Assembly: GCA_037447605.1 (NCBI GenBank) | Contig: CM074817.1 | Location: 1,736,001 to 1,800,000, forward strand | Direction of reading: 5' to 3' | Length of the DNA stretch: 64,000 nucleotides | From: Zygnema circumcarinatum SAG 698-1b | Lineage: Eukaryota; Plantae; Zygnematophyceae | Shown: positions 49,250 to 63,980 of the stretch, in pieces | Numbering within the stretch: the stretch's first letter is position 1 | Layout: every line of letters starts with the position of its first letter | Notes under the pieces: generated by a model | Told to the model about the DNA's origin: nothing | Database searches by the model: none | What the model saw: the letters and a program-made list of their open reading frames with translations, nothing else | Program-made: the position numbers and the translations under genes

Positions 49250-52200
49250 TTAATCAAGAGCAAAAAATGGATCGCTTCCCTTCACGGCGTTGTGGCGTAG
49301 GTCGAGCTCCCGACGAGCGATCCCGATGTCTTCATGTATTCTCTTCACCAGCGAATCTGCATGAGACAACATGACATCCATCCCAGCTTGAAGAATAACG
49401 GTAAGCATGAAAAGCGTCAACACTCGCAACAAGAACCGAAGCTACAACACGCGAACTCTGCTCAAGATTCAAAGGCAATGTCGTGCACATCTGAACGCAC
49501 CAAGAGAGTTGAACGGCATTTCTGGCCGAATGAAGCCGAGCACCAAGACCCGCATGTCCTTGCCATAGAAGTCCGCTCCAAAGTCGTGCAAAATGTGGAC
49601 CTCCTGCTCCATTTCAAGAATAGGCCCCTCTAATAAACACTTGACGTACATGATACCAACCTTCTAGCTTTTACTCACTTCCGACCCTCTAGCCAAGGAA
49701 AGATGACCACTTGCTGAGAAAACTTGAACCTGTTCTAACATCTAGAATCGTCATCAATCCCAGAATGGGTTTCTCGTAAAAAACTGCCGAGCAAAAGCCT
49801 TCTTCAATGGAAAGTTAACAAGTCACAGCTTAAAAGCAACAGAAATGAGATGTGATGAAGGCCATAGTTATGGGGGCAACATCTGAATGTTGTAGAATGT
49901 TGACTCACCACACTAAGACCCGCTGAATCTGCAAAAGTGGGGCGCTGCCCAACATTCATCACCATCTTGTGGACACTTCCGTCAAGTTCAGGCACCTGTG
50001 CCCATCCGAAATAAACTCCCTTCTCCACTCCCTCCAACTCGCTCTCTAGCTGCTCTGGTGGTAGATTTGCTGCAAACCGAGAAGGTATTGAAACACCATT
50101 CGTCACCATTCGGTTTGTGTTCAGAGTAGCGATGTAGGGATAGAGCTTGCCTCACTGTGGCTACCAGTTCCGGCTAGTTGTGCTAAATATGAGTGTGAAT
50201 ATAATAACATGTCGTACATTTAAAAAAGAGCAGCCTCTGTAAGGGGTTGGTTACCTGTAGGAACGCCCATTTGTCGGCTTCCCCTTCCGAAGCCATATAC
50301 AACAGGTCCCCTTAGCTGTAACGGAGCTTTCCAAAACTTATACTGCTCTGCCTCATCCACATCCGACCATACTCAACGTAAGAAAACGTCGAATACGAAA
50401 TGAACTTCAAAGAGTAGAAAGGCAGATAGTTTTGTTTATGTAAAGGCGGAATCTGCTAAAGGAGCTTGGAAAAGATTCATGTATCCTCATGGAAAAACAT
50501 GCTCGAAAACGTCAAAAAAATGCATCAGATGCACACTCACCATCTGCAGCACTGCTTGCTACCCCTGCATCGCTCGGCTTCACCTGCAGAAGCATAGATA
50601 AAAAATTTCAACCATTCCCTTTGATTTGATGCCCTTGTCATGCGTTGCAGGAAACGAATCTGTCTTGATCTCATCGAAGTTTGAGCCACATATGATAAAA
50701 GTGGAAACAAGATTACCTTGAGCACAGCGAGATAGAAGTCAGCCTCGTCTCGAAACTCTATGATTTCCAGACCTGCCTCCTCTGCCATGGGTTGGAGTGC
50801 TTCTCGATTGGGCAGCAAATGGGGGACAACCAACGGACTCTCCATGTGCAGCCGTTCAACAAACGGAGCACCAAGAGGATGGCTCAGTAATATTCGTGCC
50901 CCTGCAGTTGACCAAACTAGCGAGTAAATGTCAAGATTATGCTCAAGCTTAGTTGGCACGCCAAGACGTGGGTTCAAACAAATGACTATAGAATCATCAT
51001 CCGAACACATGATATGATGTGATGTTCACTCAGCTTACATAGTTACACATAAAATATGTAATACCCATAAGACCTTACTCTGCTTCGATTCACGAATGAC
51101 TGCTGATGTACAGTTGAAATGTACAAATTCGTTACAGGTCCAGCAAATGGAAACCAGCCACTGCCTATTTGCCTCAAGCACCTAGTTCCTTAGTTCATGT
51201 CAAGATAGAGCATCAAGCTTCTCTATATGAGAGCCAAAAGCAACCCAAATTTACATCTGCGAGGGCGAAACAAAGAGGAACATGACATCGCCTGCAATCC
51301 GCAATAAGAGCTCTTCTCCCGCCAGCGTGTCACTGGGCTGCTGGTCGCATTCACTTGACGGCAGTATAAGCATGATTAACTTTTTTCAGATGAAGTTTCT
51401 GCATACGGAATGATTTTGAAAACTAAACTTGCTGATGCAACAAGTTTGGACATGCACGGGACTTTACTACTTTTCGATTTCCAATCCAGCTTTAGATTTT
51501 TCTATAACATCCTACGGTTCAATTTGATGAAAGCATGTTGAACTTGAAGCTATGCGCACCCGAATAGTATTTCACTTTTTCGACAAGGCTCCCAGCTGTA
51601 TTGCTGTATTGCAGTATTGTAGCAAGTAATCCACCGCCAGATCCTCCGAGGAAACGAGAATGTTGGATTTACATACCTGGTGCAGTGAGCCGGACTGCAG
51701 ACTTCAATGCTTCCGTTTGAGAGTGAACGTTTCCAAACATGGCATTGAAGAACAGCACATCAAACGGACCATAATCTTCTGGAAGGTCATTGATATCTCC
51801 ATTCCAGCAGCATACACTGTCGAATTGCTCCTTCAGTTCCGCAATCATCATGGGGGAAAGGTCCACAGCTGCCCATACATACGTACACAGCTGCATATGT
51901 CAGACTCACCCACTTTTTTTCACCTCTCTCATAATTTTTAACATGTTCGATTGAAGCGTTTAATATTCTTGTCCTCGAACTTTAGCAACGTTCGTTAATA
52001 GTTGATAAGTTCAACTTTCTGTGATCGAATTGATGGAGAGCAAAACATTGACGGAACATTGTCTTGATGACTGCAAGTCTGACAACTGTGGAAGTTCATT
52101 CGTTTCATGTTTTTCTATTCACATGACTTATTCTTAGACTTCTCCATATCACACATGGCTGTTTCGTTATTGTATCAAGCTATTGTTCTGTGCACAAGTT

Positions 52201-52961
52201 AATGGCTCGATTCTGCCTTTCGTGTCCCTTTGAAGCTCCTTTGGACCATGCGTCTAACAGTCACATTCAACGTGCTGATAAGAGACCGCGAGACACTTGT
52301 CCTCGTAGAAGGAGAGTAAAAAAAAGGAAGACTGCATTCGTGGAACTTCCAACGTCCTTGTGTGAATATTTTTAAGGCAGGCTTTCGATTTCCTTTAGGC
52401 TTCCCTGGAACAACTTGGGAGGTTGGACTTCTGCGGTGCACCTGTGATGTCATCAGCGCCATTCCGAAAGATGTGTGGAATGAGTGGTCCCGTGCCTGCA
52501 CCGCAATCCAACACTCGACATCCTGCAGCCACACCTGAAGCCTTCACTATTTCTGCCAGCTTCTCATCTACATCCGGGGGAACAGGCCTCGAAAAAAAAT
52601 CGGAGTTTTCATCAAAAAACTCTGACTGCGACTTATTGTGGCATTCTCGGGGGCTATCTCCACTTTCTTGAGGGTCATAACGAGAAGGTGGATGCGCATG
52701 TCGGTCAAGGATATCGCTTAAACTATCGTTTTCTACTGACTTGCTGCTTATTAGGCTAATGGCTGACGATCCTTCCTCGGCAATTGTAGCTGCCTTCCAA
52801 CTCCTCCGACTCACTCTAATGTTTTCAGCTCTGCCGTTCAACTCTTGGAGATTAGAAATCCTTCCACTTCCCTCAGAAAATCTGTTGAAACTGCAGAGAG
52901 ACCAGGAACTAAAGCTCACTGTGAAATCTGCATTCAGCGCAGAAGCCAGCGTCCCTGCCAT
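49250..52961 (-). CDS. Class I SAM-dependent methyltransferase-like domain fused to riboflavin kinase (flavokinase), 8 exons, Ser-rich N-terminus
   Basis: Exons 52961-52442, about 51869-51677, 50902-50717, 50583-50541, 50371-50255, about 50069-49908, 49604-49499 and about 49356-49250 join in phase. Motifs: VLDCGAGTG, AVDLS, FDVLFFNAMF, SHPLG...FYLAVLK, then GPVVYGFGRGSRQMGVPT-ANL, GVYFGWA, KMVMNVGQRPTF, EVHILHDF, LGFIRPE. Confidence 0.8.
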
Positions 52962-53458
52962 GCCTCCTGCCACACGGCACCTTGAAAGCCCTCTTTTGAA
53001 ATAGATGCTGCTGCCGCAGACATTGCTACAAGATAGCAGCAGATGATGCCTGCAGAGGATCAGAGACCGAGAAAGAGAAAGGGATGCCATGACCATGTTA
53101 TAAAAATAACAGAGAAAATGACATGTGACCTCCGCCACCTGCACTGACAGCAAGACGGAACTTTAAATTTCTTTTCATGACGCCTGCGACTTCCCGCATT
53201 TCTCTCTCCGCTTCCTCCATCCTCTCCCTCTCACACTCATCACTGTAGAGACTGCTGTAGACTGCAGACTGTAGACTCATTCAGTAGACTCATAACTGTA
53301 GAATATCGCAGGCTCATCCCCTTCCCCGCAACTGAAAGAGCAGACGCACTTCCGCTTTCCATTCCTGTCTAACAAGAAGGCGCAAAAAAGCAGCTCTCCT
53401 TTTTTCATTGCTGAAATTTGAATCTATTCACGCCCTCTCTGCTCCCTGCTGAGTCGCC

Positions 53459-54982
53459 ATGGCTCAGGTTGCGTGCTTGCTCTCTGCTGCATCTGCTCCC
53501 GTTCAGCCCATACAGCAGAGCTTGGTGAGGCCACATGGCTTTTTTCTCGGAGTCTCCGTGGGAGTGTCTGGTAGGTTGAGACAGGTGACTGTGCCGCCCC
53601 TGCGAATAAGGTCGGCAAGCTACGGCATTCCTGACTATGGAATAATAAAAACCCCAAAAGCTCCTGGTGAAACAAAAGAAGAGCCTAAACCTGAGGAGCC
53701 CCAGCGCTTTTGGGAGTATGGAGCCCCAAAGCCATATGGATCACCTGCAACGTGAGACATGCAGCTCAATCTTGCAGAATGCGACTGAGCAATTCTAGAG
53801 ATTGAGTGATTCTAGAAGAGTCTGAAACTGCGAATGAAGAGTTGTCGAGGCATTTACCAATCAGTCTCTTGATGTCATGCTTGGCTACAGGTATACTGTT
53901 CCGAAGGGACTATCTGCACCTTTTGCATACAGCCCATCGACAAGCATTTCAACGGAGACTACTGATCAGAAGCTGCTAGACTCTCCTCCGGAGCCAGCTC
54001 TCTTAGAGCCTGTACCTGAACCCATCCTTCTTCCCCCCATAGACTATAGTGGAGGTGATGGCTCTGGAGGACACGCTGGAGGAAGCGGAGGAGGAGGTGG
54101 AGGAGGAGGTGGAGATGAGGGCAGCAGCAATGACGGTGGCGCAGATAAAGGAAAGGATGGGTCGAAGAAGCTGACAATGTCGCAGCTGCTAACTATGATC
54201 TACGCGGGCATTATCTTCTGTGAGTGATTGCACTAAACCAGAGCAGCACCCTTACCACGCAAAGGAAAACTCCAGCAGGCAAGCTTGCAGACTTTCCATA
54301 TTAGGATGCAGTCTGTAGAGGGTGCTTGTCACTTGACAGTGAGCTTTTGTTTAAGGACGATTAAACTAAGCCATAGAACTCCAATAAGAAATAGAGGTTA
54401 CTGTTGATTTTTTTTTTCTTCCTTAAGTTGGTGATTTTACATTGCATTTCTGATGGCACATTTTGATATGAGCTAAGAGGGCGGAATGCAGTGGGCGGCT
54501 TCATGGGATTCATGAAGAGTGGCAGCATCAAGTCTCTTGTTGCCGGAAGTGTATCTGCAGCATTTCTGTTCGCTGTCGTGCAGCTTCTCCCATCACAACC
54601 ACTGGCCGGCTCTCTTCTTGGATTAGGTGAGAATCTGCTAACGCGGACATGGAACCATTGCACAGACAATGCTGTTCACATCTACTTTGAACTCCCATGT
54701 TCTGTTGATCCTGACAAAAATAAGTTTGATTTCAAGACTCCGTGCGTTTTATCAAGTCTGTACTGGACAAATGGAGCCCACTCTGTAAGACTAAATTGTA
54801 TGGGATGGGATCGGATGGATGCGGTGCCTTGGGCTGCAGGCGTGTCAGGAGCGTTGCTGGCTGTTATGGGTCAGCGTTTTTTGAATTCAGGCCGTTTTTT
54901 CCCGGCAGGCTTCGTTTCGCTCATCTCATTTATCATGGGTGGAGGATACATTCATGGCATTGCCCGTAGCGGCCATAAGTGA
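53459..54982 (+). CDS. FATTY ACID EXPORT 2-like, TMEM14 family, plastid-targeted
   Basis: Transit-peptide-like N-terminus and Gly-rich linker, then MSQLLTMIYAGIIF-VGGFMGFMKSGSIKSLVAG...GQRFLNSGRFFPAGFVSLISFIMGGGYIHGI. FAX numbering differs between papers, so no symbol is given. Confidence 0.85.
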
Positions 54983-55665: not shown

Positions 55666-58600
55666 TCACTGGTCTGCGGTCCAGCGACGGAAAGGAAATT
55701 TCTGGAGGGGTTCGTCTCCGTCCCCAATGCCATCCTCGCCAAGGATTTGCCTCAAGCCGTCACCTCCCCAGACTCGCGACTCCGGGCGAGGAATTTGTGC
55801 TTGTGTCCGGTCCTCTACTTTTCCTGCAAGCTCCGAGTCGCCGGCCTTAACCGTCTCCCTCTGCAATACCTCCTTATGCCCTTCCTCTTCGCGGCTGGTG
55901 GGAACAACAGTAGCAGTTTTTGTTCTGTCCGCCGGCTCCACTCTTCTCGGAGAGTGGCGCAAAACGGTGGAGCTTATTCCCCCCTTCTGAGAAAGAGCGG
56001 TAATAGAATCAAGTGAAGCCCTAAGCCGTCTTCGGTGGTGAGTAGAGCCTTCATGCTTCAGGCCCTCAGCATCAAGACCGCTGACAGTTCCTGCTCGTGC
56101 AAAGGGGAGTGATGAGATTCCCTCACGAAGGATGCGGTGGAGAGTGTTGCCGGGAGAGATTCCACGATTGCTCCCACCCACACTGCCATGGTACGATGCA
56201 CCGGGAGACTTCGTAGGAAACTGAGAGCTGCTGCCAAAAGAATTCATAGACTTCCCAAGTCCCCTGCGGCGATGCACAGTGATGTCGCGGGAGAGGTCTT
56301 CAATACTCTCCTGCCACTCCCTCTCCAGATCCGCTGCTGAAACTGGAGCTGCAGTGGTTGCAATTCGCAGGCAGCTTTGTGAGCGGCCTGTGTCGAATCG
56401 AAGGGGCCAAAAACTTGCAACAGTGCTGGCCATCTTGTGAAACATAACCTGCACCCAAAAGGAACACGGATCACTACCAATGGAAAAGAAAGTAAAAAAC
56501 TAACAGAAGAGCCGTTCTCTCTCTACTCTGGGCTGTCCAAATGCCCATCCTGATTGTCGGCTTGTCAAAGCTCATTGTCTCACCTGGAAGGCGAGTAGTC
56601 GCTCGAGTGAGACAAATCTATTCTCTGTCAATTCTTCCAGCGGTGCCTGCGAGTCCAAAACGCGCTGCACATCGAGGTCCATGGCGCCAAGAAGTATGCA
56701 ACGTGCATCTGGACTTTCAATTTCTGCCGCATCAATCTCCGATCGCCCACCTGCCACCATGCCCAGCTGCATCCCCACATTGATAGTCAGCGCAGATATG
56801 GGGATATGACATCTGGGAATCTGAAATTCTAGAAATTGCCTGCACCTACATTCTTCTTTTCCCAGAGACTTATGCAGGTCCTCCGTAGCAAAGTTCTGTT
56901 CATCCTTACCCCGATTCGTCGAGCACGCTGTAGAGTCCCCTCTAAACAGAGATGAGCTCCGACAACCTGCGAATCAAACTCCTCAAATTTACTCCGCCCA
57001 CCTCCTGCTTGTACGACATGTCGTCGAGATGCCATTCGCTTCATCTGTAAGCCCACCATCTTGCCCTAATCAGGCCTCCCTTACTAGGATTGGGGAGTAG
57101 AAAGAGTGCCTTCAACAACTGTTCTAGCCATAGCTCCACTTGTCTATTATGAACGTCATATGGCTGCAAACTGCTTGGAACACAGCGATACGGGGTTGTT
57201 GAAGTGGTTCAAATTACCGGCTCGAAATCATCCACTCCCAAGAGTCTCTCACACAGAAATTGCGGCCTGTTACTTTGCAGCAACAAATGGCGTTTGATGA
57301 CTTTGCTCGTGTGTGGGTTGTGACCTGCCACGAATGCAAGCTCAACTGCCCACTTTCAGCTTTCCTGCATTAACTACTGCATCAATTGGCGGTCTGAACC
57401 TACTTCACCACTTCAACTCATGTCTTCACCGAATTCACCTTCTTTGCCCGAAATGTGAACTTAGCGCAGGAATAAGTGCGAGAAGGGAATTAAAAGGAGA
57501 AAGAAAAGGAGAGTGGAGAGGACGGACGGCAGAAACAAAAGCAGAGAAACAGATGATGTATTTGCAAATTTGTATTTGTGGAATGTGCAGGACTGAAGCC
57601 TGCATGAGTGGAAGTACGAGAGAGAAGAAATGAAGGAACGAGCAAAGAGAGGATGAAAACGGAGCAGAAACTCACCGATAGTGATGGCCTCAGCGCCCGC
57701 CCCGAGGCTGACTATGGAGCGAGCCTGCAGGAGGGCCATTAGCACCCATGACTCGCCTGCCAACACAGCAAGCAATAAGACATAAGTCATATGAGGTGCG
57801 AACAACAGTCCCCTTCTGCAAAGCAATAACAGACCATTTTCCTGAAACCCACTAGGCTAAAGCACAAGCATTCCCATACATTTGGTTTGACTGCAAAGTC
57901 GACCGTCGGGACGGCCGATAGCGAGCAGAACTCCGCGCTTCACCCGATGAGTGAAGCGATGCACAAAGTGGTCAATGGGGTTCGCCCCATGCACCTCCAC
58001 TGACGCAATCCTGCATGAGTAAATGAAAAAACGAGTCAAAGAACAGATAGAGAAGTTCACCATATAATAATTTTACGAATGAACGAATGTGTTTACATAA
58101 AGTTCTAAGCATTCAAGCCCATGAAGGGAACTGACCAGTAGCTCAAGGAAAACAGCTTAGAGACGTAAGTCTCCAGCAACTGGTGGACGTACGGAATGTC
58201 TGCCACCACCTGCAAGGAAGGCAACGATGCCTCCTCTGTTAGCTCTTGAAAACAGACTGAAAGGCAGGCCTGTGAAGGACAAGCACATAGAACAAGACTC
58301 TAGTCATGAATGCTGAGTGATTCAGTGTAGCTTCAAAAACCCAACACTTAAAGCACTTGGGATTGACGGCACCCATCTACATCAGCTGAACACGAATGAC
58401 AAAACAACAGACTCATAGAAGTAATTCCTAAACCTTTCGATATAGCCATGTTTGCTCAACGAGTGAAGCTATACCCCGCTTCGGAAAAAAGGCAAGAAGT
58501 GAGGGAAATTTACTATTGTGCGCATCCCGATGCGGGCAAGAAGTTGCCTCCCTTGCAACACCCGCAGGAGGAGAGCACAGAGGAGGGGCAGAAAGCAGTA

Positions 58601-61600
58601 CACGGCAGAGTCTAGGGCATGCGCAATATATGCACATACGTCATCTGCCCTCCCGCCTACATGCGCATACAAAAGGAGGATTCAGGAGCAGAGTTGGAGA
58701 GGGCTCTCATTGTTCGACCACTCGAAAAAAGCTGCTTTAGCGAGCGGTGGAAAAACGAAGCAGAGTGGAGGGACTCACTCAGCGGAAGGGCTTTGCGGAT
58801 GACTGTGAATATGGGGACCCCCAACACGACGGTAATAAAGATATAGGCACAAGCCATTCCCCAAGCAATTGGCGTCTCCAGGACATGAAGAGCCCACTGT
58901 CCCACCCAGCAACAGCATAAAGCATCCGCTCACGCTCAGGGCTTGCTGTTGCTGTTGTAAGTTGTCATAGCGTGCGAGTCAGTGAAGTTTCTCTGCACCT
59001 AAACCCCACAAGAAAAGGAGCGCACCTGAAACCCTTGCTGAATGAGGGCCTCGTGCGTTGCAGAGAAAGCTGCAGAGCCCTCTGCAGTGTAGCCAGTGAT
59101 GTCCACACTTCCACGATCAACCAAGGCATCTCGCATCCTCTGTGGAATTGTAGCAAAAACCGCAGTAAAGTAAGTAGACTGTAGAGGCTCAACAGAGCGA
59201 GCTTGTGACTAGAGAAGCATTTCTTGCATCCACGCTAACCTGCAAGTCCACAATGTCAAGCCGAGAGAGTCGAAGTCCCAAGGGTGCTGCAGGCAGGCCC
59301 GGGGCCGTCCGCAGTTGGCGGGCGAGCAGCAACATCAGCTCTGTGAGGGAGGCATGCATCGCGACAGCTGTCACAGTAGCAGCTTCCGCTGCGCCCCCAA
59401 CCCAAAGTGCACAACTCAGAAGCTTTCGTTGAAGAATTTAAAGGTACGGGTGGTGCATGGACTGGAACATGCCTTGCTTTGCCTGTTCAATGATGTCAGT
59501 TTGCCTGTTCAACAGTGTCAGTTTGCCTGTTCAATAGTGTCAGTTTGCCTGTTCAATAGTGGCAGTTTGCCTGTTCAATAGGGTCAGTTTTCCTGTTCAA
59601 TAGGATTCGCCTCCCTTACCGGATCGCCAGCCCGCATTAGTGCAGAAGATGCGCCCTCCAAATGGCGCATCTGTCGCGAAACGCTGCCCTACTGCAGCCG
59701 CCATTTTGGTGTCCAACATTCCCACACATACAAATACACGCCTGTGCCCCCAGCCGCTTCTACCAACGCGTGAGATCTTTGGGTCGTGACTGAAGCTTCC
59801 CCAAGCTGCAAGCATTAACACATGACTCCTTCCGCTCCCATTGCCGACGAGATCAGATACGGGACTCCTTGCAATAGCGACTATTGGCAGACCCGGCAGG
59901 CCTGCTTACCCCGGACACTGCTTTGCAAGAATGCGCGTGGCGTGAAGAGTCGGGAAAGTTTGTCCCGACTGTGAGAGAGCCAAGACGAGGGAGCTGCTGC
60001 TGAGAGCAGTGCCCAATTGGCAGAAGGAAAATCCGGCGGTGGAAATGGCACCACGAGCATTGCCCATCACTCCGATCACTTTGTTTGCTGACATAGGCAC
60101 CACTCGCAGTTGTGGAAAGAGGTTCTGCATGCCCATCAAATTTATGCACCATCACTAAATAATGCGAGTGGTGTTTTTATTCCATGGCGAGAGAAAGTGC
60201 TGAAGGAAGAAGCTGAGAGAGAGTTATGCTGACCTGGAGATCGGCTGCAAACTGTTCTCCCACCCAAAGGGAATTCTCGACACCTACGACCAGCACATCT
60301 ATCTCCCGCCGATTGTTGCCTTCTGATGGAACTTCGCCGGCTCGAGCACCTGCTTTCTCGCGCAGCATCTCGAACATTGCTTGGGCTGTCTGCCTGTTCA
60401 GGCTTGCGTCCGAAGCCCAGTCACTGCGGATCTCAGCTAGAATTCGAGGAATACTCTGCAGTAGTGTTGCCAATTCGACAGACGAATAATTTGAGCGAGC
60501 ATGACCACCTACATACTCCCTTGCCTAATACGTGCTTCCCAAAAACACGACTCTCTCATTCCTGTACTTCTCCACACAGACGAGAAACTTTGAGAACTGT
60601 ACTCTTGAGCTCACCTTGATGTCCTGACCCACAAGATCGTGACGTGACATCGGAGGATGCAGGGCAACATAGCGGTTGTTTTTGAGGTTTACAAGACGCC
60701 CTGATGACTCCAGCTCCTCCTGGATGCTCCAAGGCCAGAGACCCATAGATTGCATTCCATCAATTCCTAAAATCAACCAGCCTTGTGTAATGTCATGAAG
60801 TAGAACTAGTGCAGAAAATGGTGAGACGCACGCATTAGACCTCACCGCGGAAATGTCTCTTGAACAGTTTATGTGAGGCAGTGGAAGAAGCAACAGTCAG
60901 ATCAGCAAGAACAGATCTAGAAGCTTACAGATCCTACAGCACAGCTGAGTCGGCGATTATGCAAACGCAGCTGCACGAATGGCGCATTCTCCAGCACAAA
61001 CGCCCTGCTCTGTGACGGAACGCCTCCCTCCACATCCACATGCCCAAGCAGCGAGTGAGGCAGGCCTGCATGCATGGGGTACTCCCCCTTGCTCTCCTCT
61101 GCAATGCTGTCATGCCCGGGTGGCAGCAGCAGCAGCTCCAAGACTTCGCCGTCCGCTTCATCGAGGTCAAGGCGGCAACTGATGTGCTCTCCTGCTGACG
61201 CTTTCTTTCCATTCAATGTCGTTTTGGGCCCTTGCAAGGACACTTTTAAGGCATGCGATTCAGAAGAATAAAGCACTGCTCGCTGAGGGGGTGCGAAGCC
61301 CACTGAGAGCGGCTGATTGTATGCAGCGAGCACAACCCGGTCGGCATCAAGCGTGCAGCTCACCGCCAAACCAAAGGAGCCCTGCAGAATCATCGTTTGC
61401 CTAAGTGAGATTCTAGTTCTCGGTTCAACATAAAAAAGGTTGTGAGGGCCAAGAGTGCTCCATGGTTTAAAAGGCTGCGACGAACTGGCATGCCCACCTT
61501 AGCATGTGCCAGAAAGTGTTTGAGCGCCCAGAAGAGGTCATTGTGGAGGAAATTGCGCACTGTCTGCTGTGCCAACATTTGCAGAGTCTCCTCAGGGAGG

Positions 61601-63980
61601 CCTGCCAACAGACTCTGCTCAGCACTGGATGCTTTCCGCAGAGCTGCTGCACCCTCACTGCGAAGGGCTCCATGGAGTGCTCTCTCCAATTCAGCTTCTG
61701 TTTCTCCCTTGATCACCTGCCAGAGGCTGCCACCTGGCACCTCATAGAAGTTTCACCAAAGGGGGGGTAGTAAGACAGCAGTCGAGCGCATTCCACAGCT
61801 AAAAATAGCAGCTTGGATTTCTTTTTTCTTTCCTTTACAGTGGCTATCAAATCAGTAAACTCACCGCAAGCTTTCCTATCGGAGTAGCTATCCTCTTTAT
61901 CGTTTCCCACATCCTCCGGCTCCCGTGAAGTGTGGCTTGTTGTAGTTTTCGATAGGAGATTTGCGAAGGTGCGCTCTGCAACAGCAGCGAGAACTTCCAA
62001 CGCACGACGAGATGGTGCAGCGCATGGGTCTCCAGGCTTCGCCATTACTACTTCGTCATATGAACTGACCACCACCTGCAGCATGTGAGTAGGGCGTCTG
62101 GTCCAAATCAGAGCTGGCCCTCACTAACACAAGGGCCCTACAGAAAGGCATATAAGACCCTCCAACTTTTCTTCTATGGAAGGGCACCTGTTGGAATGCC
62201 AGGCGGAGGGAAGCACGCCAAAGGCCCTGCGTGCGGAGAAGCTCCATCAGACCGCCTATGACCACACTGTCACACTGCGCAGGGGCAGAGCTTCCGAGCA
62301 CTCGATGTAGCCACAACGCCATCTCCGCATGCGTGCGATCTCTGGCAAAAGTGACAATTTGAGACTTCTACGGTTTCAGGACATATTGCAAGGTGAAAAC
62401 AGGGTTCTCGATTCCGCATCGACAGCCAGTGAACTGCACACACGTCCTCGGAAAGAAGAAGACTCACCGGCCAAACATGTTCCAGAACTCAAAATCCCCG
62501 TTGTGAGTGACAAACACGCCAACTTGCTCCTTGCTGCTGTAAGGACATCCATTAAGCTGGTTGACACGCCACATGTATTCTCTGCGAGTTGGGGTCCATT
62601 GATGCGGGTGGGTTTCCAGTGGAGAGGGGATGCTGGAGGTGGCAAACCTTGTGTGTCCAGCAAAAAGCTTCATGCTACTGCCGTCTCTACCTGTCCCTCT
62701 GGGTCTCCGTTGGAAACACCAGGTAAAAATAGAGCGAAGATAGGCCCAGATTTGGACAAGGGAGCAGCTCCACTGAAATCGTCCAATTAACTGTCATCGC
62801 AGAGCAGCAAGAAGCAGGGTGTCAAAATTCATTTATAAGATAAGGATGTCTTACGATTCCTTATGAACTTAGGCTAGACTGAAATGGACTTCATGTTTGA
62901 TTATGGACCATGCATATGATGAGCCCTGCTGAAAAAAACACAACTGCAACATGGGAAAGTCTGGAGTCTAATGGCTCTGTAATGAAGTTAGAACCTCAAC
63001 TTAATAAGGGGAGTGGTCGTCCACGAACTTCTCCTATCCATGCTGATTTACGTGAGAGAAACTAAAGAGTGTTTGAAATGGCAAATAGGATATCGCCAGA
63101 CTCCTTAGATGAATTTTGGAGTGAGAGCTGTTTGTAAAACGGAGAAAAATCTAAATGTAAGCAAACGAGCAGAGAGAAGCCTGACACTCTGTGCGGTGAA
63201 AGCTCGCCCTGGAAGAGTTACTGGGCAAGAAACAGGCTTTCTACGCAAAACAAAAAATCAAGCGCGTGCGCAAAAGTGAGTATCATACACGAGGCGCGCA
63301 GTATTGTTGAGTACCTTGTGGGAGAGGGATTCACGCTTGGAGGGGCACACGCGCACGCGTACGGGAGTCATCTCTCCTCCAGACGTCTCAAGGAAGGTGA
63401 CTAGGCCTCCAGACTGCCCCCCACGTTCAGTCGACACGGCCGCCATGGCCTCCAGCACCGCCATTACATCAACTGCCTTCTCCCTGCCAGTAAGCCCAAA
63501 AAGAAACGTGACAGATCAACTTCTGCTCACTAATTGACTTCTCCAGGATACCTCCATTCATGGCGCAGGAGAAAGGTCTTTAATCTCTGAGTCACGTATT
63601 TCCCGACCGTAAAAACTAGAAGAAAGGAGCTATTCCTATTTGAGGTGTTCCCCATGCCAAGCAAGAAAAGTAGGCACGTCTGCACCTACGACCCAGAACC
63701 AATGTCGAAAGTCGTTTTACCTGAGACTGCTTACAGTCCCAGCAAGCAAGAGGCCGAAATTTCCGCAGAAGAATGCAGAATCTCCTACAGTTACCGGCAA
63801 ACTTGCTCGAACCAAATCTGTTGCACTTGCTCCCACCAAGCAGCACAAGCAACCGAGCACAGCTTCTGCTCCGCAGTCCCTCCATGGAAACACAGGGCCG
63901 TGACTAACTTCCCCTCTGTTCAAGGAAAGCATCCATTGGCCTCCACAGAAAATAATAAGACTTGCCAACCAGCCAGTCAA
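55666..63980 (-). CDS. Large GlmS/GFAT-like protein: type-2 glutamine amidotransferase + SIS domains + hydrophobic segments (5' end unresolved)
   Basis: CGNFGLLL...ERGGQSGG, FAGHTRFATSS...THPH, FVTHNGDF, QCDS, GSFGLAVSCTLD; SIS LALSQSGQTFPTL; hydrophobic AWGMACAYIFITVVLGVPIF and AVYCFLPLLCALLLRVL; HGANPIDHFVHRF; FWPLRFDTGRSQSCLRIATTAAPVS. Confidence 0.7.
59478..59603. repeat. 22-bp intronic minisatellite, about 6 units (TGTCAGTTTGCCTGTTCAATAG)
   Basis: Read directly; lies in the intron between GWRS and AEAATV of the GFAT-like gene. Confidence 0.9.

What the first reader, a model, noticed from the sequence alone, without database searches (positions are those of the whole stretch)
49250..52961. 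Methyltransferase-riboflavin kinase fusion with a plastid-type N-terminus: candidate organellar flavokinase
Seen: the methyltransferase exon ends FYLAVLK|gtaatc. A 43-nt linker exon (50583-50541, VKPSDAGVASSAAD+G) leads in phase into the exon at 50371 (VWSDVDEAEQ...GPVVYGFGRGSRQMGVPT). That kinase exon has an in-frame TGA immediately upstream and no Met before the GFGRGS motif, so it cannot start a separate protein. The kinase motifs (PTAN, EVH, IRPE) and SAM motif I (VLDCGAGTG) look intact, and the N-terminus is Ser/Arg-rich. Known: the characterised land-plant riboflavin kinase is the cytosolic HAD-phosphatase/RFK bifunctional protein (AtFMN/FHy), and plastid RibF-like proteins were reported to have only FAD synthetase activity. 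Inference: this could be a plastid flavokinase with a SAM-binding partner domain. It could also serve as a Rosetta-stone clue linking the orphan land-plant methyltransferase-like family to flavin metabolism.
Basis: partly seen in the sequence, partly recalled or inferred. Interest (0 to 1): 0.8.

Follow-up and report, generated by a model that had tools for sequence, protein, structure and literature searches.

The report
Methyltransferase-riboflavin kinase fusion gene, RFK2-type
This streptophyte alga has a real, spliced gene joining a SAM-methyltransferase domain to a riboflavin (vitamin B2) kinase; it is the counterpart of Chlamydomonas RFK2, a chloroplast protein, and belongs to an old green-lineage family whose fused architecture no paper I could search describes.

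Summary
The fusion is real. RNA contigs from four public runs join all eight exons with GT..AG introns, including last methyltransferase (MT) exon to 43-nt linker exon to first kinase exon.

Two corrections:
- The linker splices to 50347, not 50371. This removes 8 codons and keeps the frame.
- An in-frame ATG at 53096 may be the true start.

The architecture is conserved in at least 60 fetched proteins: streptophyte algae, many chlorophytes, mosses and a liverwort. No vascular plant appeared. Databases call them "riboflavin kinase".

One member is Chlamydomonas RFK2 (Cre01.g025250), localised by tagging to the chloroplast, near thylakoids. So the plastid-flavokinase idea is supported by orthology, but it is not new for algae.

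- **Kinase domain:** eukaryote-type with all catalytic motifs. Every invariant column of the family alignment lies in it.
- **MT domain:** 40-48% identical to about 205-aa stand-alone bacterial methyltransferases. Its SAM motifs are intact here but decayed in bryophytes, Volvocales, Mamiellales and Cymbomonas.
- **Land-plant link:** I found no land-plant stand-alone MT family, so the Rosetta-stone idea is unsupported.

The MT substrate and this protein's location remain untested. The scan's earlier notes on this genome hold nothing on flavin genes.

The parts
52962..53096 (-). Possible 5' extension of the coding region. In-frame ATGs lie at 53096-53094 and 53090-53088. It adds 45 residues with no acidic residue and looks like a transit peptide.
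Evidence: The N-terminus resembles that of orthologue P0001. RNA contigs are continuous to 53300. The start site itself is not mapped.
52442..52961 (-). It encodes a disordered, Ser-rich N-terminal region, the start of the MT domain and SAM motif I (VLDCGAGTG, residues 150-158).
   Evidence: The 52442|51868 joint is seen in 4 runs. The equivalent N-terminal 97 residues of P0001 have pLDDT below 50.
51677..51868 (-). Exon 2, MT domain core. It holds the post-I acidic residue (AVDLS), motif III (GDINDL) and the family motif FFNAMFGN.
   Evidence: Pfam Methyltransf_11 at 26.1 bits and Methyltransf_25 at 26.3 bits. Joints. Alignment.
50717..50901 (-). Exon 3, the C-terminal part of the MT domain. 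It ends ..FYLAVLK.
   Evidence: Joints 51677|50901 and 50717|50583. It aligns end to end with the bacterial stand-alone MT profile: window residues 100-303, 226.6 bits.
50541..50583 (-). Exon 4, the 43-nt linker exon (VKPSDAGVASSAAD). It lies in the variable inter-domain linker.
   Evidence: Both flanking joints are seen in all 4 runs. The linker varies in length across the family.
50255..50347 (-). Exon 5 as spliced in RNA. It starts at 50347, not 50371, and begins the RFK domain with GFGRGS....PT of the PTAN motif.
Evidence: The 50541|50347 joint is seen in 4 runs; no joint at 50371 was reported.
49909..50069 (-). Exon 6, RFK domain (AN of PTAN, VYFGWA, MNVGQRPTF).
   Evidence: Flavokinase 28.0 bits. 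Joints.
49501..49603 (-). Exon 7, RFK domain. It holds the catalytic Glu in EVH, plus DFYG and IRPE.
   Evidence: Flavokinase 32.4 bits. Joints. These columns are invariant in the family.
49250..49356 (-). Exon 8, the C-terminal helix of the RFK domain and the stop codon TAA at 49252-49250.
   Evidence: Joint 49501|49356. The contigs run on below 49000, which is the 3' UTR.

Best explanation
An eight-exon nuclear gene of a streptophyte alga encodes one polypeptide of 467-512 aa. It has three parts:
- a disordered, basic and hydroxyl-rich N-terminal presequence;
- a complete class I SAM-dependent methyltransferase (MT) domain of bacterial descent;
- after a short variable linker, a eukaryote-type riboflavin kinase (RFK) domain.

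It is the orthologue of Chlamydomonas RFK2.

Most likely mechanism:
- The precursor is imported into the chloroplast, where riboflavin is made.
- The RFK domain phosphorylates riboflavin with ATP/Mg to FMN for plastid flavoproteins.
- In this alga the MT domain still binds SAM. It probably methylates an unidentified small molecule, or it couples kinase function to SAM/SAH.
- That activity is an accessory one, because several lineages let the SAM site decay while keeping the domain.

What is shown: the fused spliced mRNA, the conserved two-domain family, intact motifs, and the chloroplast location of the Chlamydomonas orthologue.

What is inferred: import in this alga, kinase activity, SAM binding, and any methyl transfer.
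For: Fused mRNA:
- All seven splice joints are seen in four runs, with single contigs across both domains.
- No Met lies before the GFGRGS motif, so a kinase-only product is not possible from this exon.

Conserved family:
- Eight 50%-identity clusters found with exon 1 carry Methyltransf_* plus PF01687, or align colinearly over both domains.
- About 100 two-domain hits span Klebsormidium, Chlorokybus, Mesostigma, Spirogloea, many chlorophytes, the mosses Physcomitrium and Ceratodon, and the liverwort Calypogeia.
- CrRFK2 is a member and is chloroplast-localised.

Kinase domain:
- Best solved relatives are S. pombe and human RFK (E 1e-31 and 2e-29). Bacterial RibF scores 1e-8 to 1e-17.
- Foldseek TM by target is 0.80-0.85.
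- All 21 invariant columns of the 59-sequence alignment lie in the RFK domain, including GxGRG, TAN, the Glu of EVH, and R-x-E.

MT domain:
- It matches a profile of bacterial stand-alone MTs end to end at 226.6 bits.
- Identity to them is 40-48%, against 27-31% to the bryophyte and Volvocales MT-like domains. RFK identity stays at 53-62% to those same proteins.
- Motif I, the post-I Asp, the motif III Asp and FFNAxFGN are intact here.

Tree: the eukaryotic MT domains form one clade (SH-aLRT 93) that splits into Streptophyta and Chlorophyta. This fits a single ancient fusion.

N-terminal extension:
- It is absent from the bacterial homologues.
- It is disordered in the model.
- It is low in acidic residues across orthologues.
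Against: - Localisation was shown only for the Chlamydomonas protein, which shares 37% identity and has a decayed MT domain. No targeting predictor was available here.
- No enzyme activity has been measured for any member that I could find.
- The MT domain matches no specific characterised MT family. The best sequence match is PEAMT at E 3e-9. The folds resemble ChlM, UbiG and MenG only generically, with TM about 0.6.
- Bacterial gene neighbourhoods give no flavin link.
- Decay of the SAM site in at least four lineages shows that methyl transfer is not what keeps the fusion together.
Confidence: 0.7

Rival explanations
1. Same fused plastid kinase, but the MT domain is a non-catalytic module in this alga too. 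It would act as a scaffold, an oligomerisation or membrane-association surface, or a SAM/SAH-sensing regulator of the kinase, and not as an enzyme.
For: - The domain is kept while its SAM-binding residues decay in mosses, a liverwort, Volvocales (including CrRFK2), Mamiellales and Cymbomonas. The retained function there cannot be methyl transfer.
- CrRFK2, with a decayed MT domain, overlaps strongly with chlorophyll, i.e. it is thylakoid-associated.
- No invariant column of the family lies in the MT domain.
- RFK modules elsewhere are also fused to Rossmann-like partners: HAD in AtFMN/FHy and FMNAT in RibF.
Against: In this alga and most algal lineages, all SAM motifs and the FFNAxFGN motif are kept at 40-48% identity to free-living bacterial enzymes. 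That pattern is hard to explain without selection on cofactor binding or catalysis.
Confidence: 0.25
2. The protein is mitochondrial or dual-targeted rather than plastid-specific. It would supply FMN to mitochondria.
For: - Basic, hydroxyl-rich presequences without acidic residues do not separate plastid from mitochondrial targeting by eye.
- Mitochondrial FMN synthesis in plants is also unassigned.
Against: The only experimental datum for the family is chloroplast localisation of CrRFK2. CrRFK2 was also listed among plastid-ribosome-associated proteins in PMC8894945.
Confidence: 0.12
3. The fusion is an artefact: two neighbouring genes joined by read-through transcription or by contig assembly, and normally expressed as separate proteins.
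For: Logan contigs are unstranded and also chain this gene to its neighbours upstream of 53300.
Against: - The MT-to-linker and linker-to-kinase joints are true GT..AG splices, at the same depth as the other joints in four runs.
- The kinase exon has no start codon before its ATP-binding loop.
- The same colinear architecture occurs in about 100 proteins from algae to bryophytes.
Confidence: 0.02

Closest known systems
Chlamydomonas reinhardtii RFK2 (Cre01.g025250 / CHLRE_01g025250v5)
   Same: - Same two-domain order, colinear over window residues 125-451 (37% identity, E 3e-60).
- The RFK domains are 55% identical.
- It has an N-terminal presequence.
- It was experimentally localised to the chloroplast.
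   Different: - CrRFK2 has a decayed MT domain: motif I reads VVGSGAV, Pfam finds no MT domain, and it scores only 37 bits against the bacterial MT profile, versus 227 bits here.
- The window protein keeps every SAM motif.
- The window protein has a longer linker, encoded by its own 43-nt exon.
Monofunctional eukaryotic riboflavin kinases (S. pombe Fmn1 1N05-1N08; human RFK 1NB0, 1Q9S)
   Same: These are the best sequence and fold matches of the kinase domain, at 40-43% identity and TM by target 0.80-0.85. They share the GxGRGS..PTAN, E-x-H and RPE motifs.
   Different: They are about 150-aa single-domain cytosolic or mitochondrial enzymes without a methyltransferase domain or plastid presequence.
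Arabidopsis AtFMN/FHy (Q84MD8), the bifunctional riboflavin kinase/FMN hydrolase
   Same: It is a plant protein with a C-terminal eukaryote-type RFK domain fused to an N-terminal alpha/beta domain.
   Different: - Its partner domain is a HAD phosphatase, not a methyltransferase.
- It is cytosolic.
- The structural superposition of the whole proteins is poor (rmsd 16.9 A).
Plastid RibF-type FAD synthetases (AtRibF1/2) and bacterial RibF
   Same: They are plastid flavin-nucleotide enzymes and carry a Flavokinase-like C-terminal module.
   Different: - The plant RibF C-terminal module lacks kinase active-site residues and kinase activity (PMC2972280, PMC9678776).
- The window's kinase is much closer to eukaryotic RFK than to RibF.
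- The window protein has no FAD_syn domain.
Stand-alone bacterial class I methyltransferases of about 205 aa (Melainabacteria/Obscuribacterales, Acidobacteriota, Binatia, delta-proteobacteria)
   Same: They align end to end with the window's MT domain at 40-48% identity. They share motif I, the post-I Asp, the motif III Asp and FFNAxFGN.
   Different: - They have no kinase domain and no presequence.
- Their function is unknown.
- Their gene neighbours are not conserved across phyla and include no flavin genes.

Membership tests
Riboflavin kinase, eukaryote type (Pfam Flavokinase PF01687; EC 2.7.1.26) | Significant match to the Flavokinase profile | tested here: met
Window exons 5-7 score 19.3, 28.0 and 32.4 bits separately against a cut-off of 19.6. 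The 63%-identical orthologue P0001 scores 125.6 bits.
Riboflavin kinase, eukaryote type (Pfam Flavokinase PF01687; EC 2.7.1.26) | Nucleotide/Mg site GxGRGS...PTAN, the catalytic Glu (E-x-H), and the RPE motif | tested here: met
   GFGRGS at residues 332-337, PTAN 343-346, EVH 399-401, IRPE 423-426. These columns are invariant in 59 family members. The assignment of roles rests on the published human and S. pombe structures (my knowledge; the entries are listed).
Riboflavin kinase, eukaryote type (Pfam Flavokinase PF01687; EC 2.7.1.26) | Six-stranded beta-barrel RFK fold | tested here: met
   Tested on the orthologue model, not on the window protein itself. Foldseek TM by target is 0.80-0.85 to 1N06, 1Q9S and 1NB0.
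Riboflavin kinase, eukaryote type (Pfam Flavokinase PF01687; EC 2.7.1.26) | Riboflavin + ATP -> FMN activity | not testable with these tools
   This needs a recombinant enzyme assay or complementation of yeast fmn1.
Class I SAM-dependent methyltransferase | Profile match and Rossmann-like seven-strand fold | tested here: met
   Exon 2 scores Methyltransf_11 26.1 bits against a cut-off of 21.2. P0001 hits Methyltransf_23/25/11/31 at 51-57 bits. Model pLDDT is about 97 over residues 125-325. Fold matches to ChlM, UbiG, MenG and other small-molecule MTs are only generic, with TM about 0.6.
Class I SAM-dependent methyltransferase | SAM-binding residues: motif I (V/I)LDxGxGxG, an acidic residue after strand 2, an acidic residue in motif III | tested here: met
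   VLDCGAGTG at residues 150-158, AVDLS 174-178, GDINDL 197-202. The same positions are lost in mosses, Calypogeia, Volvocales, Mamiellales and Cymbomonas.
Class I SAM-dependent methyltransferase | SAM binding and methyl transfer to a defined acceptor | not testable with these tools
   No characterised close relative was found. The best solved sequence match is PEAMT at E 3e-9.
RFK2-type MT-like + RFK proteins of green algae and bryophytes | Colinear homology over both domains to CrRFK2 and the other family members | tested here: met
   E 3e-60 to P0218 over window residues 125-451, and 63% identity over 390 aa to P0001. The MT-domain tree puts the window inside the streptophyte subclade.
RFK2-type MT-like + RFK proteins of green algae and bryophytes | Chloroplast localisation | not testable with these tools
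   Shown only for CrRFK2. Here there are only presequence-like features.
AtFMN/FHy-type HAD phosphatase + RFK | N-terminal HAD (FMN hydrolase) domain | tested here: not met
   No HAD family appears in any Pfam scan. The N-terminal domain is a methyltransferase.
RibF-type bifunctional FAD synthetase | N-terminal FMN adenylyltransferase (FAD_syn) domain and a bacterial-type kinase module | tested here: not met
   No FAD_syn hit. RibF chains score E 1e-8 to 1e-17, against 1e-29 to 1e-31 for eukaryotic RFKs.

The most novel reading that the evidence does not exclude
The MT-RFK protein is the ancestral plastid flavokinase of the whole green lineage. It arose from one fusion of a host RFK with a methyltransferase of bacterial origin. 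Where the SAM site is intact, as here, the MT domain is functionally coupled to flavin metabolism: either it methylates a flavin-related or plastid small molecule, or it gates FMN synthesis by SAM/SAH. Vascular plants then lost the protein, which would explain why their plastid riboflavin kinase has never been identified by homology.
Probability: 0.15. Interest if true: 0.7.

Novelty: new member of a known kind. Interest (0 to 1): 0.45.

Why it matters
Riboflavin is made in plastids, but the enzyme that turns it into FMN there is still listed as unidentified for plants (PMC9678776). This family supplies a concrete candidate for green algae and bryophytes. One orthologue is already seen in the Chlamydomonas chloroplast, and another sits in the tractable moss Physcomitrium (LOC112289639).

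The unreported point is the partner domain: a bacterial-type methyltransferase that is fully intact in streptophyte algae and most chlorophytes, yet decayed in at least four lineages. That offers a natural experiment on what a fused enzyme domain does once its chemistry is dispensable. The intact forms, such as this one, are the right proteins to test for SAM binding and for a methyl acceptor.

I saw no vascular-plant member. This is not proven absence, but it would mean the plastid kinase of seed plants must be sought elsewhere.

Tried and rejected
Rejected. All four runs splice to 50347, and no joint at 50371 was reported.

2. **Stand-alone land-plant MT family (the Rosetta-stone idea).**
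- phmmer of exon 1 against 1.84 billion representatives, a search with the MT part of P0001 and two cluster look-ups gave only bacterial or metagenomic proteins of about 205 aa, plus one marine-eukaryote transcript.
- The apparent 'MT-only' hits P0004 and P0012 end exactly at the window's exon 2/3 boundary (residue 238). They are probably ORF fragments of intron-containing eukaryotic genes.
- An ESM-Atlas lead could not be followed because no sequences are returned. It was a 264-aa Streptophyta cluster without Pfam, score 0.81.

3. **Functional clue from bacterial gene context.** No flavin genes lie beside the MT gene. No neighbour is conserved across phyla among 25 loci. An adjacent EamA transporter occurs in only two Obscuribacterales loci.

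4. **A specific MT subfamily by sequence or fold.** Only generic small-molecule MT matches were found.

5. **Literature on the fusion.** Six searches found RFK2 only as a named gene, a localised protein, or an entry in omics tables. None mention its MT domain.

6. **Whole spliced window protein in the big databases.** It has no reference form and I did not type it. Exon 1, the orthologue P0001 and local BLAST in scripts were used instead. The structure model is therefore of P0001 (63% identical), not of the window protein.

7. **Transcription start.** It could not be mapped.
Full report
**1.

All its exons have GT..AG borders. The concatenated frame gives a methyltransferase (MT) followed by a riboflavin kinase (RFK).

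Single exons already hit Pfam:
- Exon 2 hits Methyltransf_11 and Methyltransf_25.
- Exons 5-7 hit Flavokinase PF01687.

No Met precedes GFGRGS in that frame.

**2. RNA evidence**

One search found runs of the same organism that hold the stretch. Laying the contigs of four of them gave seven joints, each present in all four runs and each GT..AG on the minus strand.

- The seventh differs. The 43-nt linker exon (50583-50541) is joined to 50347, not 50371.
- This removes 24 nt (VWSDVDEA) and keeps the frame.
- The resulting junction ..SSAAD|EQYKFWKAPLQLRG.. matches the nearest orthologue without a gap.
- A single 6461-nt contig in X1 carries all eight exons. A 540-nt contig in X5 runs from exon 2 to exon 7.

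The MT and the kinase are therefore made from one spliced mRNA. The contigs also run on upstream of 53300 into neighbouring genes. This reflects unstranded assembly across overlapping transcripts and is not evidence of a longer protein.

**3. Start codon**

- The added 45 residues have no acidic residue.
- They begin MVMASLSLSRSL.., close to the first residues of orthologue P0001 (MEALSLPRSL..).
- RNA contigs cover this stretch.

I consider 53096 or 53090 the more likely start, but the transcription start is not mapped.

**4. Family**

*How members were found.* phmmer of exon 1 against 1.84 billion representative proteins gave 73 hits.
- Seven carry Methyltransf_* plus Flavokinase by the Pfam scan: P0001, P0002, P0007, P0027, P0029 and P0036 by the scan, and P0053 by precomputed Pfam.
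- P0065 aligns colinearly with the window protein over both domains.
- P0001 is 63% identical to the window protein over 390 residues.

*Who has it.* Searches with P0001 and with a Volvox member listed about 100 two-domain proteins:
- streptophyte algae: Klebsormidium, Chlorokybus, Mesostigma, Spirogloea;
- chlorophytes: Chlorella, Raphidocelis, Haematococcus, Trebouxia, Pyramimonas, Micromonas, Bathycoccus and others;
- mosses: Physcomitrium and Ceratodon;
- a liverwort: Calypogeia.

Sources name them 'riboflavin kinase' or 'hypothetical protein'. No vascular plant appeared. The word-based prefilter of that tool means this is not proof of absence.

*Link to RFK2.* P0218 is CHLRE_01g025250v5, that is Cre01.g025250 = RFK2. 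It aligns with the window protein over both domains (E 3e-60).

*Organism.* Earlier notes of this scan call the organism a zygnematophyte or streptophyte alga. My MT-domain tree places the window protein in the streptophyte subclade next to two unnamed transcriptome sequences. This agrees with those notes.

**5. Literature**

- The Chloroplast Protein Atlas preprint reports that tagged RFK2 overlaps strongly with chlorophyll, and suggests that FMN is made near thylakoids.
- RFK2 also appears in plastid-ribosome, UV-stress and iron-stress data sets.
- None of these mention a methyltransferase domain. Searches combining riboflavin kinase with methyltransferase found nothing on the fusion.
- For plants, the only characterised riboflavin kinase is cytosolic AtFMN/FHy.
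- The plastid RibF proteins lack kinase activity.
- Plastid and mitochondrial FMN synthesis is assigned to unidentified enzymes (PMC9678776; PMC2972280).

**6. Kinase domain**

- It is of the eukaryotic monofunctional type. S. pombe and human RFK are the best solved relatives (E 1e-31 and 2e-29). RibF scores 1e-8 to 1e-17.
- The AlphaFold model of P0001 superposes on these solved structures with TM by target 0.80-0.85.
- All 21 invariant columns of the 59-member alignment lie in this domain.
- The window protein has every one of the motifs.

**7. Methyltransferase domain**

*Bacterial relatives.*
- A profile of about 205-aa stand-alone bacterial proteins matches the window end to end (residues 100-303, 226.6 bits).
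- Those proteins come from Melainabacteria/Obscuribacterales, Acidobacteriota, Binatia and delta-proteobacteria.

*Tree.*
- The eukaryotic domains form one clade (SH-aLRT 93) nested among the bacterial ones.
- Inside it, Streptophyta and Chlorophyta separate.
- This fits one fusion before the two lineages split.

*Decay in some lineages.*
- The window keeps motif I, the post-I Asp, the motif III Asp and the family motif FFNAxFGN.
- Mosses, Calypogeia, Volvocales (including RFK2), Mamiellales and Cymbomonas have lost them.
- The window's MT domain is 40-48% identical to bacterial enzymes. It is only 27-31% identical to the bryophyte and Volvocales domains.
- Kinase identity stays at 53-62% to those same proteins.
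- The decayed lineages sit on long branches.

*What it does.*
- No specific MT subfamily could be named.
- Bacterial gene neighbourhoods give no hint.

**8. Reading**

The firm part:
- This is a real RFK2-type gene.
- Its kinase half is under strong constraint.
- Its MT half is intact here.

The likely part is plastid import and FMN synthesis there. This rests on the Chlamydomonas orthologue and on presequence-like N-termini throughout the family.

The open part is what the MT half does:
- Intact SAM motifs across most algae argue for real cofactor binding or catalysis.
- Repeated decay with retention of the domain argues that a second, non-catalytic role holds the fusion together.

The land-plant and Rosetta-stone parts are not supported.

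**9. Limits**

- The spliced window protein could not be submitted to the large searches or to structure prediction, so an orthologue stood in.
- Contigs, not reads, were laid, so rare isoforms would be missed.
- No targeting predictor was available.
- Absence from vascular plants is an impression from the named hits only.

Noticed in passing
window 53459-54982 (+): A divergent, head-to-head neighbour gene encodes a TMEM14 / FAX-like membrane protein (Pfam Tmemb_14, 60 bits on the ORF 54491-54982). It has a Gly-rich middle exon and a presequence-like N-terminus. RNA contigs run without a break from the fusion gene's exon 1 past 53300, towards this gene. The two 5' ends therefore probably overlap or share a bidirectional promoter of under 400 bp.
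   Followed up: partly
window 53098-53280 (-): A 60-codon upstream ORF in another frame ends with TAA at 53100-53098, one base before the candidate start ATG at 53096. If the mRNA starts upstream of 53280, this would be a uORF placed for reinitiation.
   Followed up: no
window 51327: A single G>A difference in a low-depth contig of run X1 inside intron 2. It is probably a strain or allele difference in unspliced RNA or DNA carry-over.
   Followed up: no
L001, L005-L026, L050 (bacterial loci): An uncharacterised, well-conserved family of about 205-aa class I methyltransferases with an invariant FFNAxFGN-type motif. It occurs in Melainabacteria/Obscuribacterales, Acidobacteriota, Binatia and delta-proteobacteria. 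It is the closest stand-alone relative of the algal MT domain. No conserved neighbours occur across phyla.
   Followed up: partly
P0004, P0012 (Logan contigs of 12.9 and 21.9 kb): These 'MT-only' database proteins stop aligning exactly at the window's exon 2/3 boundary (residue 238). This suggests they are ORF-caller fragments of related eukaryotic genes with the same intron position.
   Followed up: no
window 55666-63980 (-): The X1 RNA contig that carries the fusion gene extends 3910 nt beyond 53300. It probably also chains into the next gene downstream of the TMEM14 gene, which another note of the scan describes as GlmS/GFAT-like. I did not examine it.
   Followed up: no
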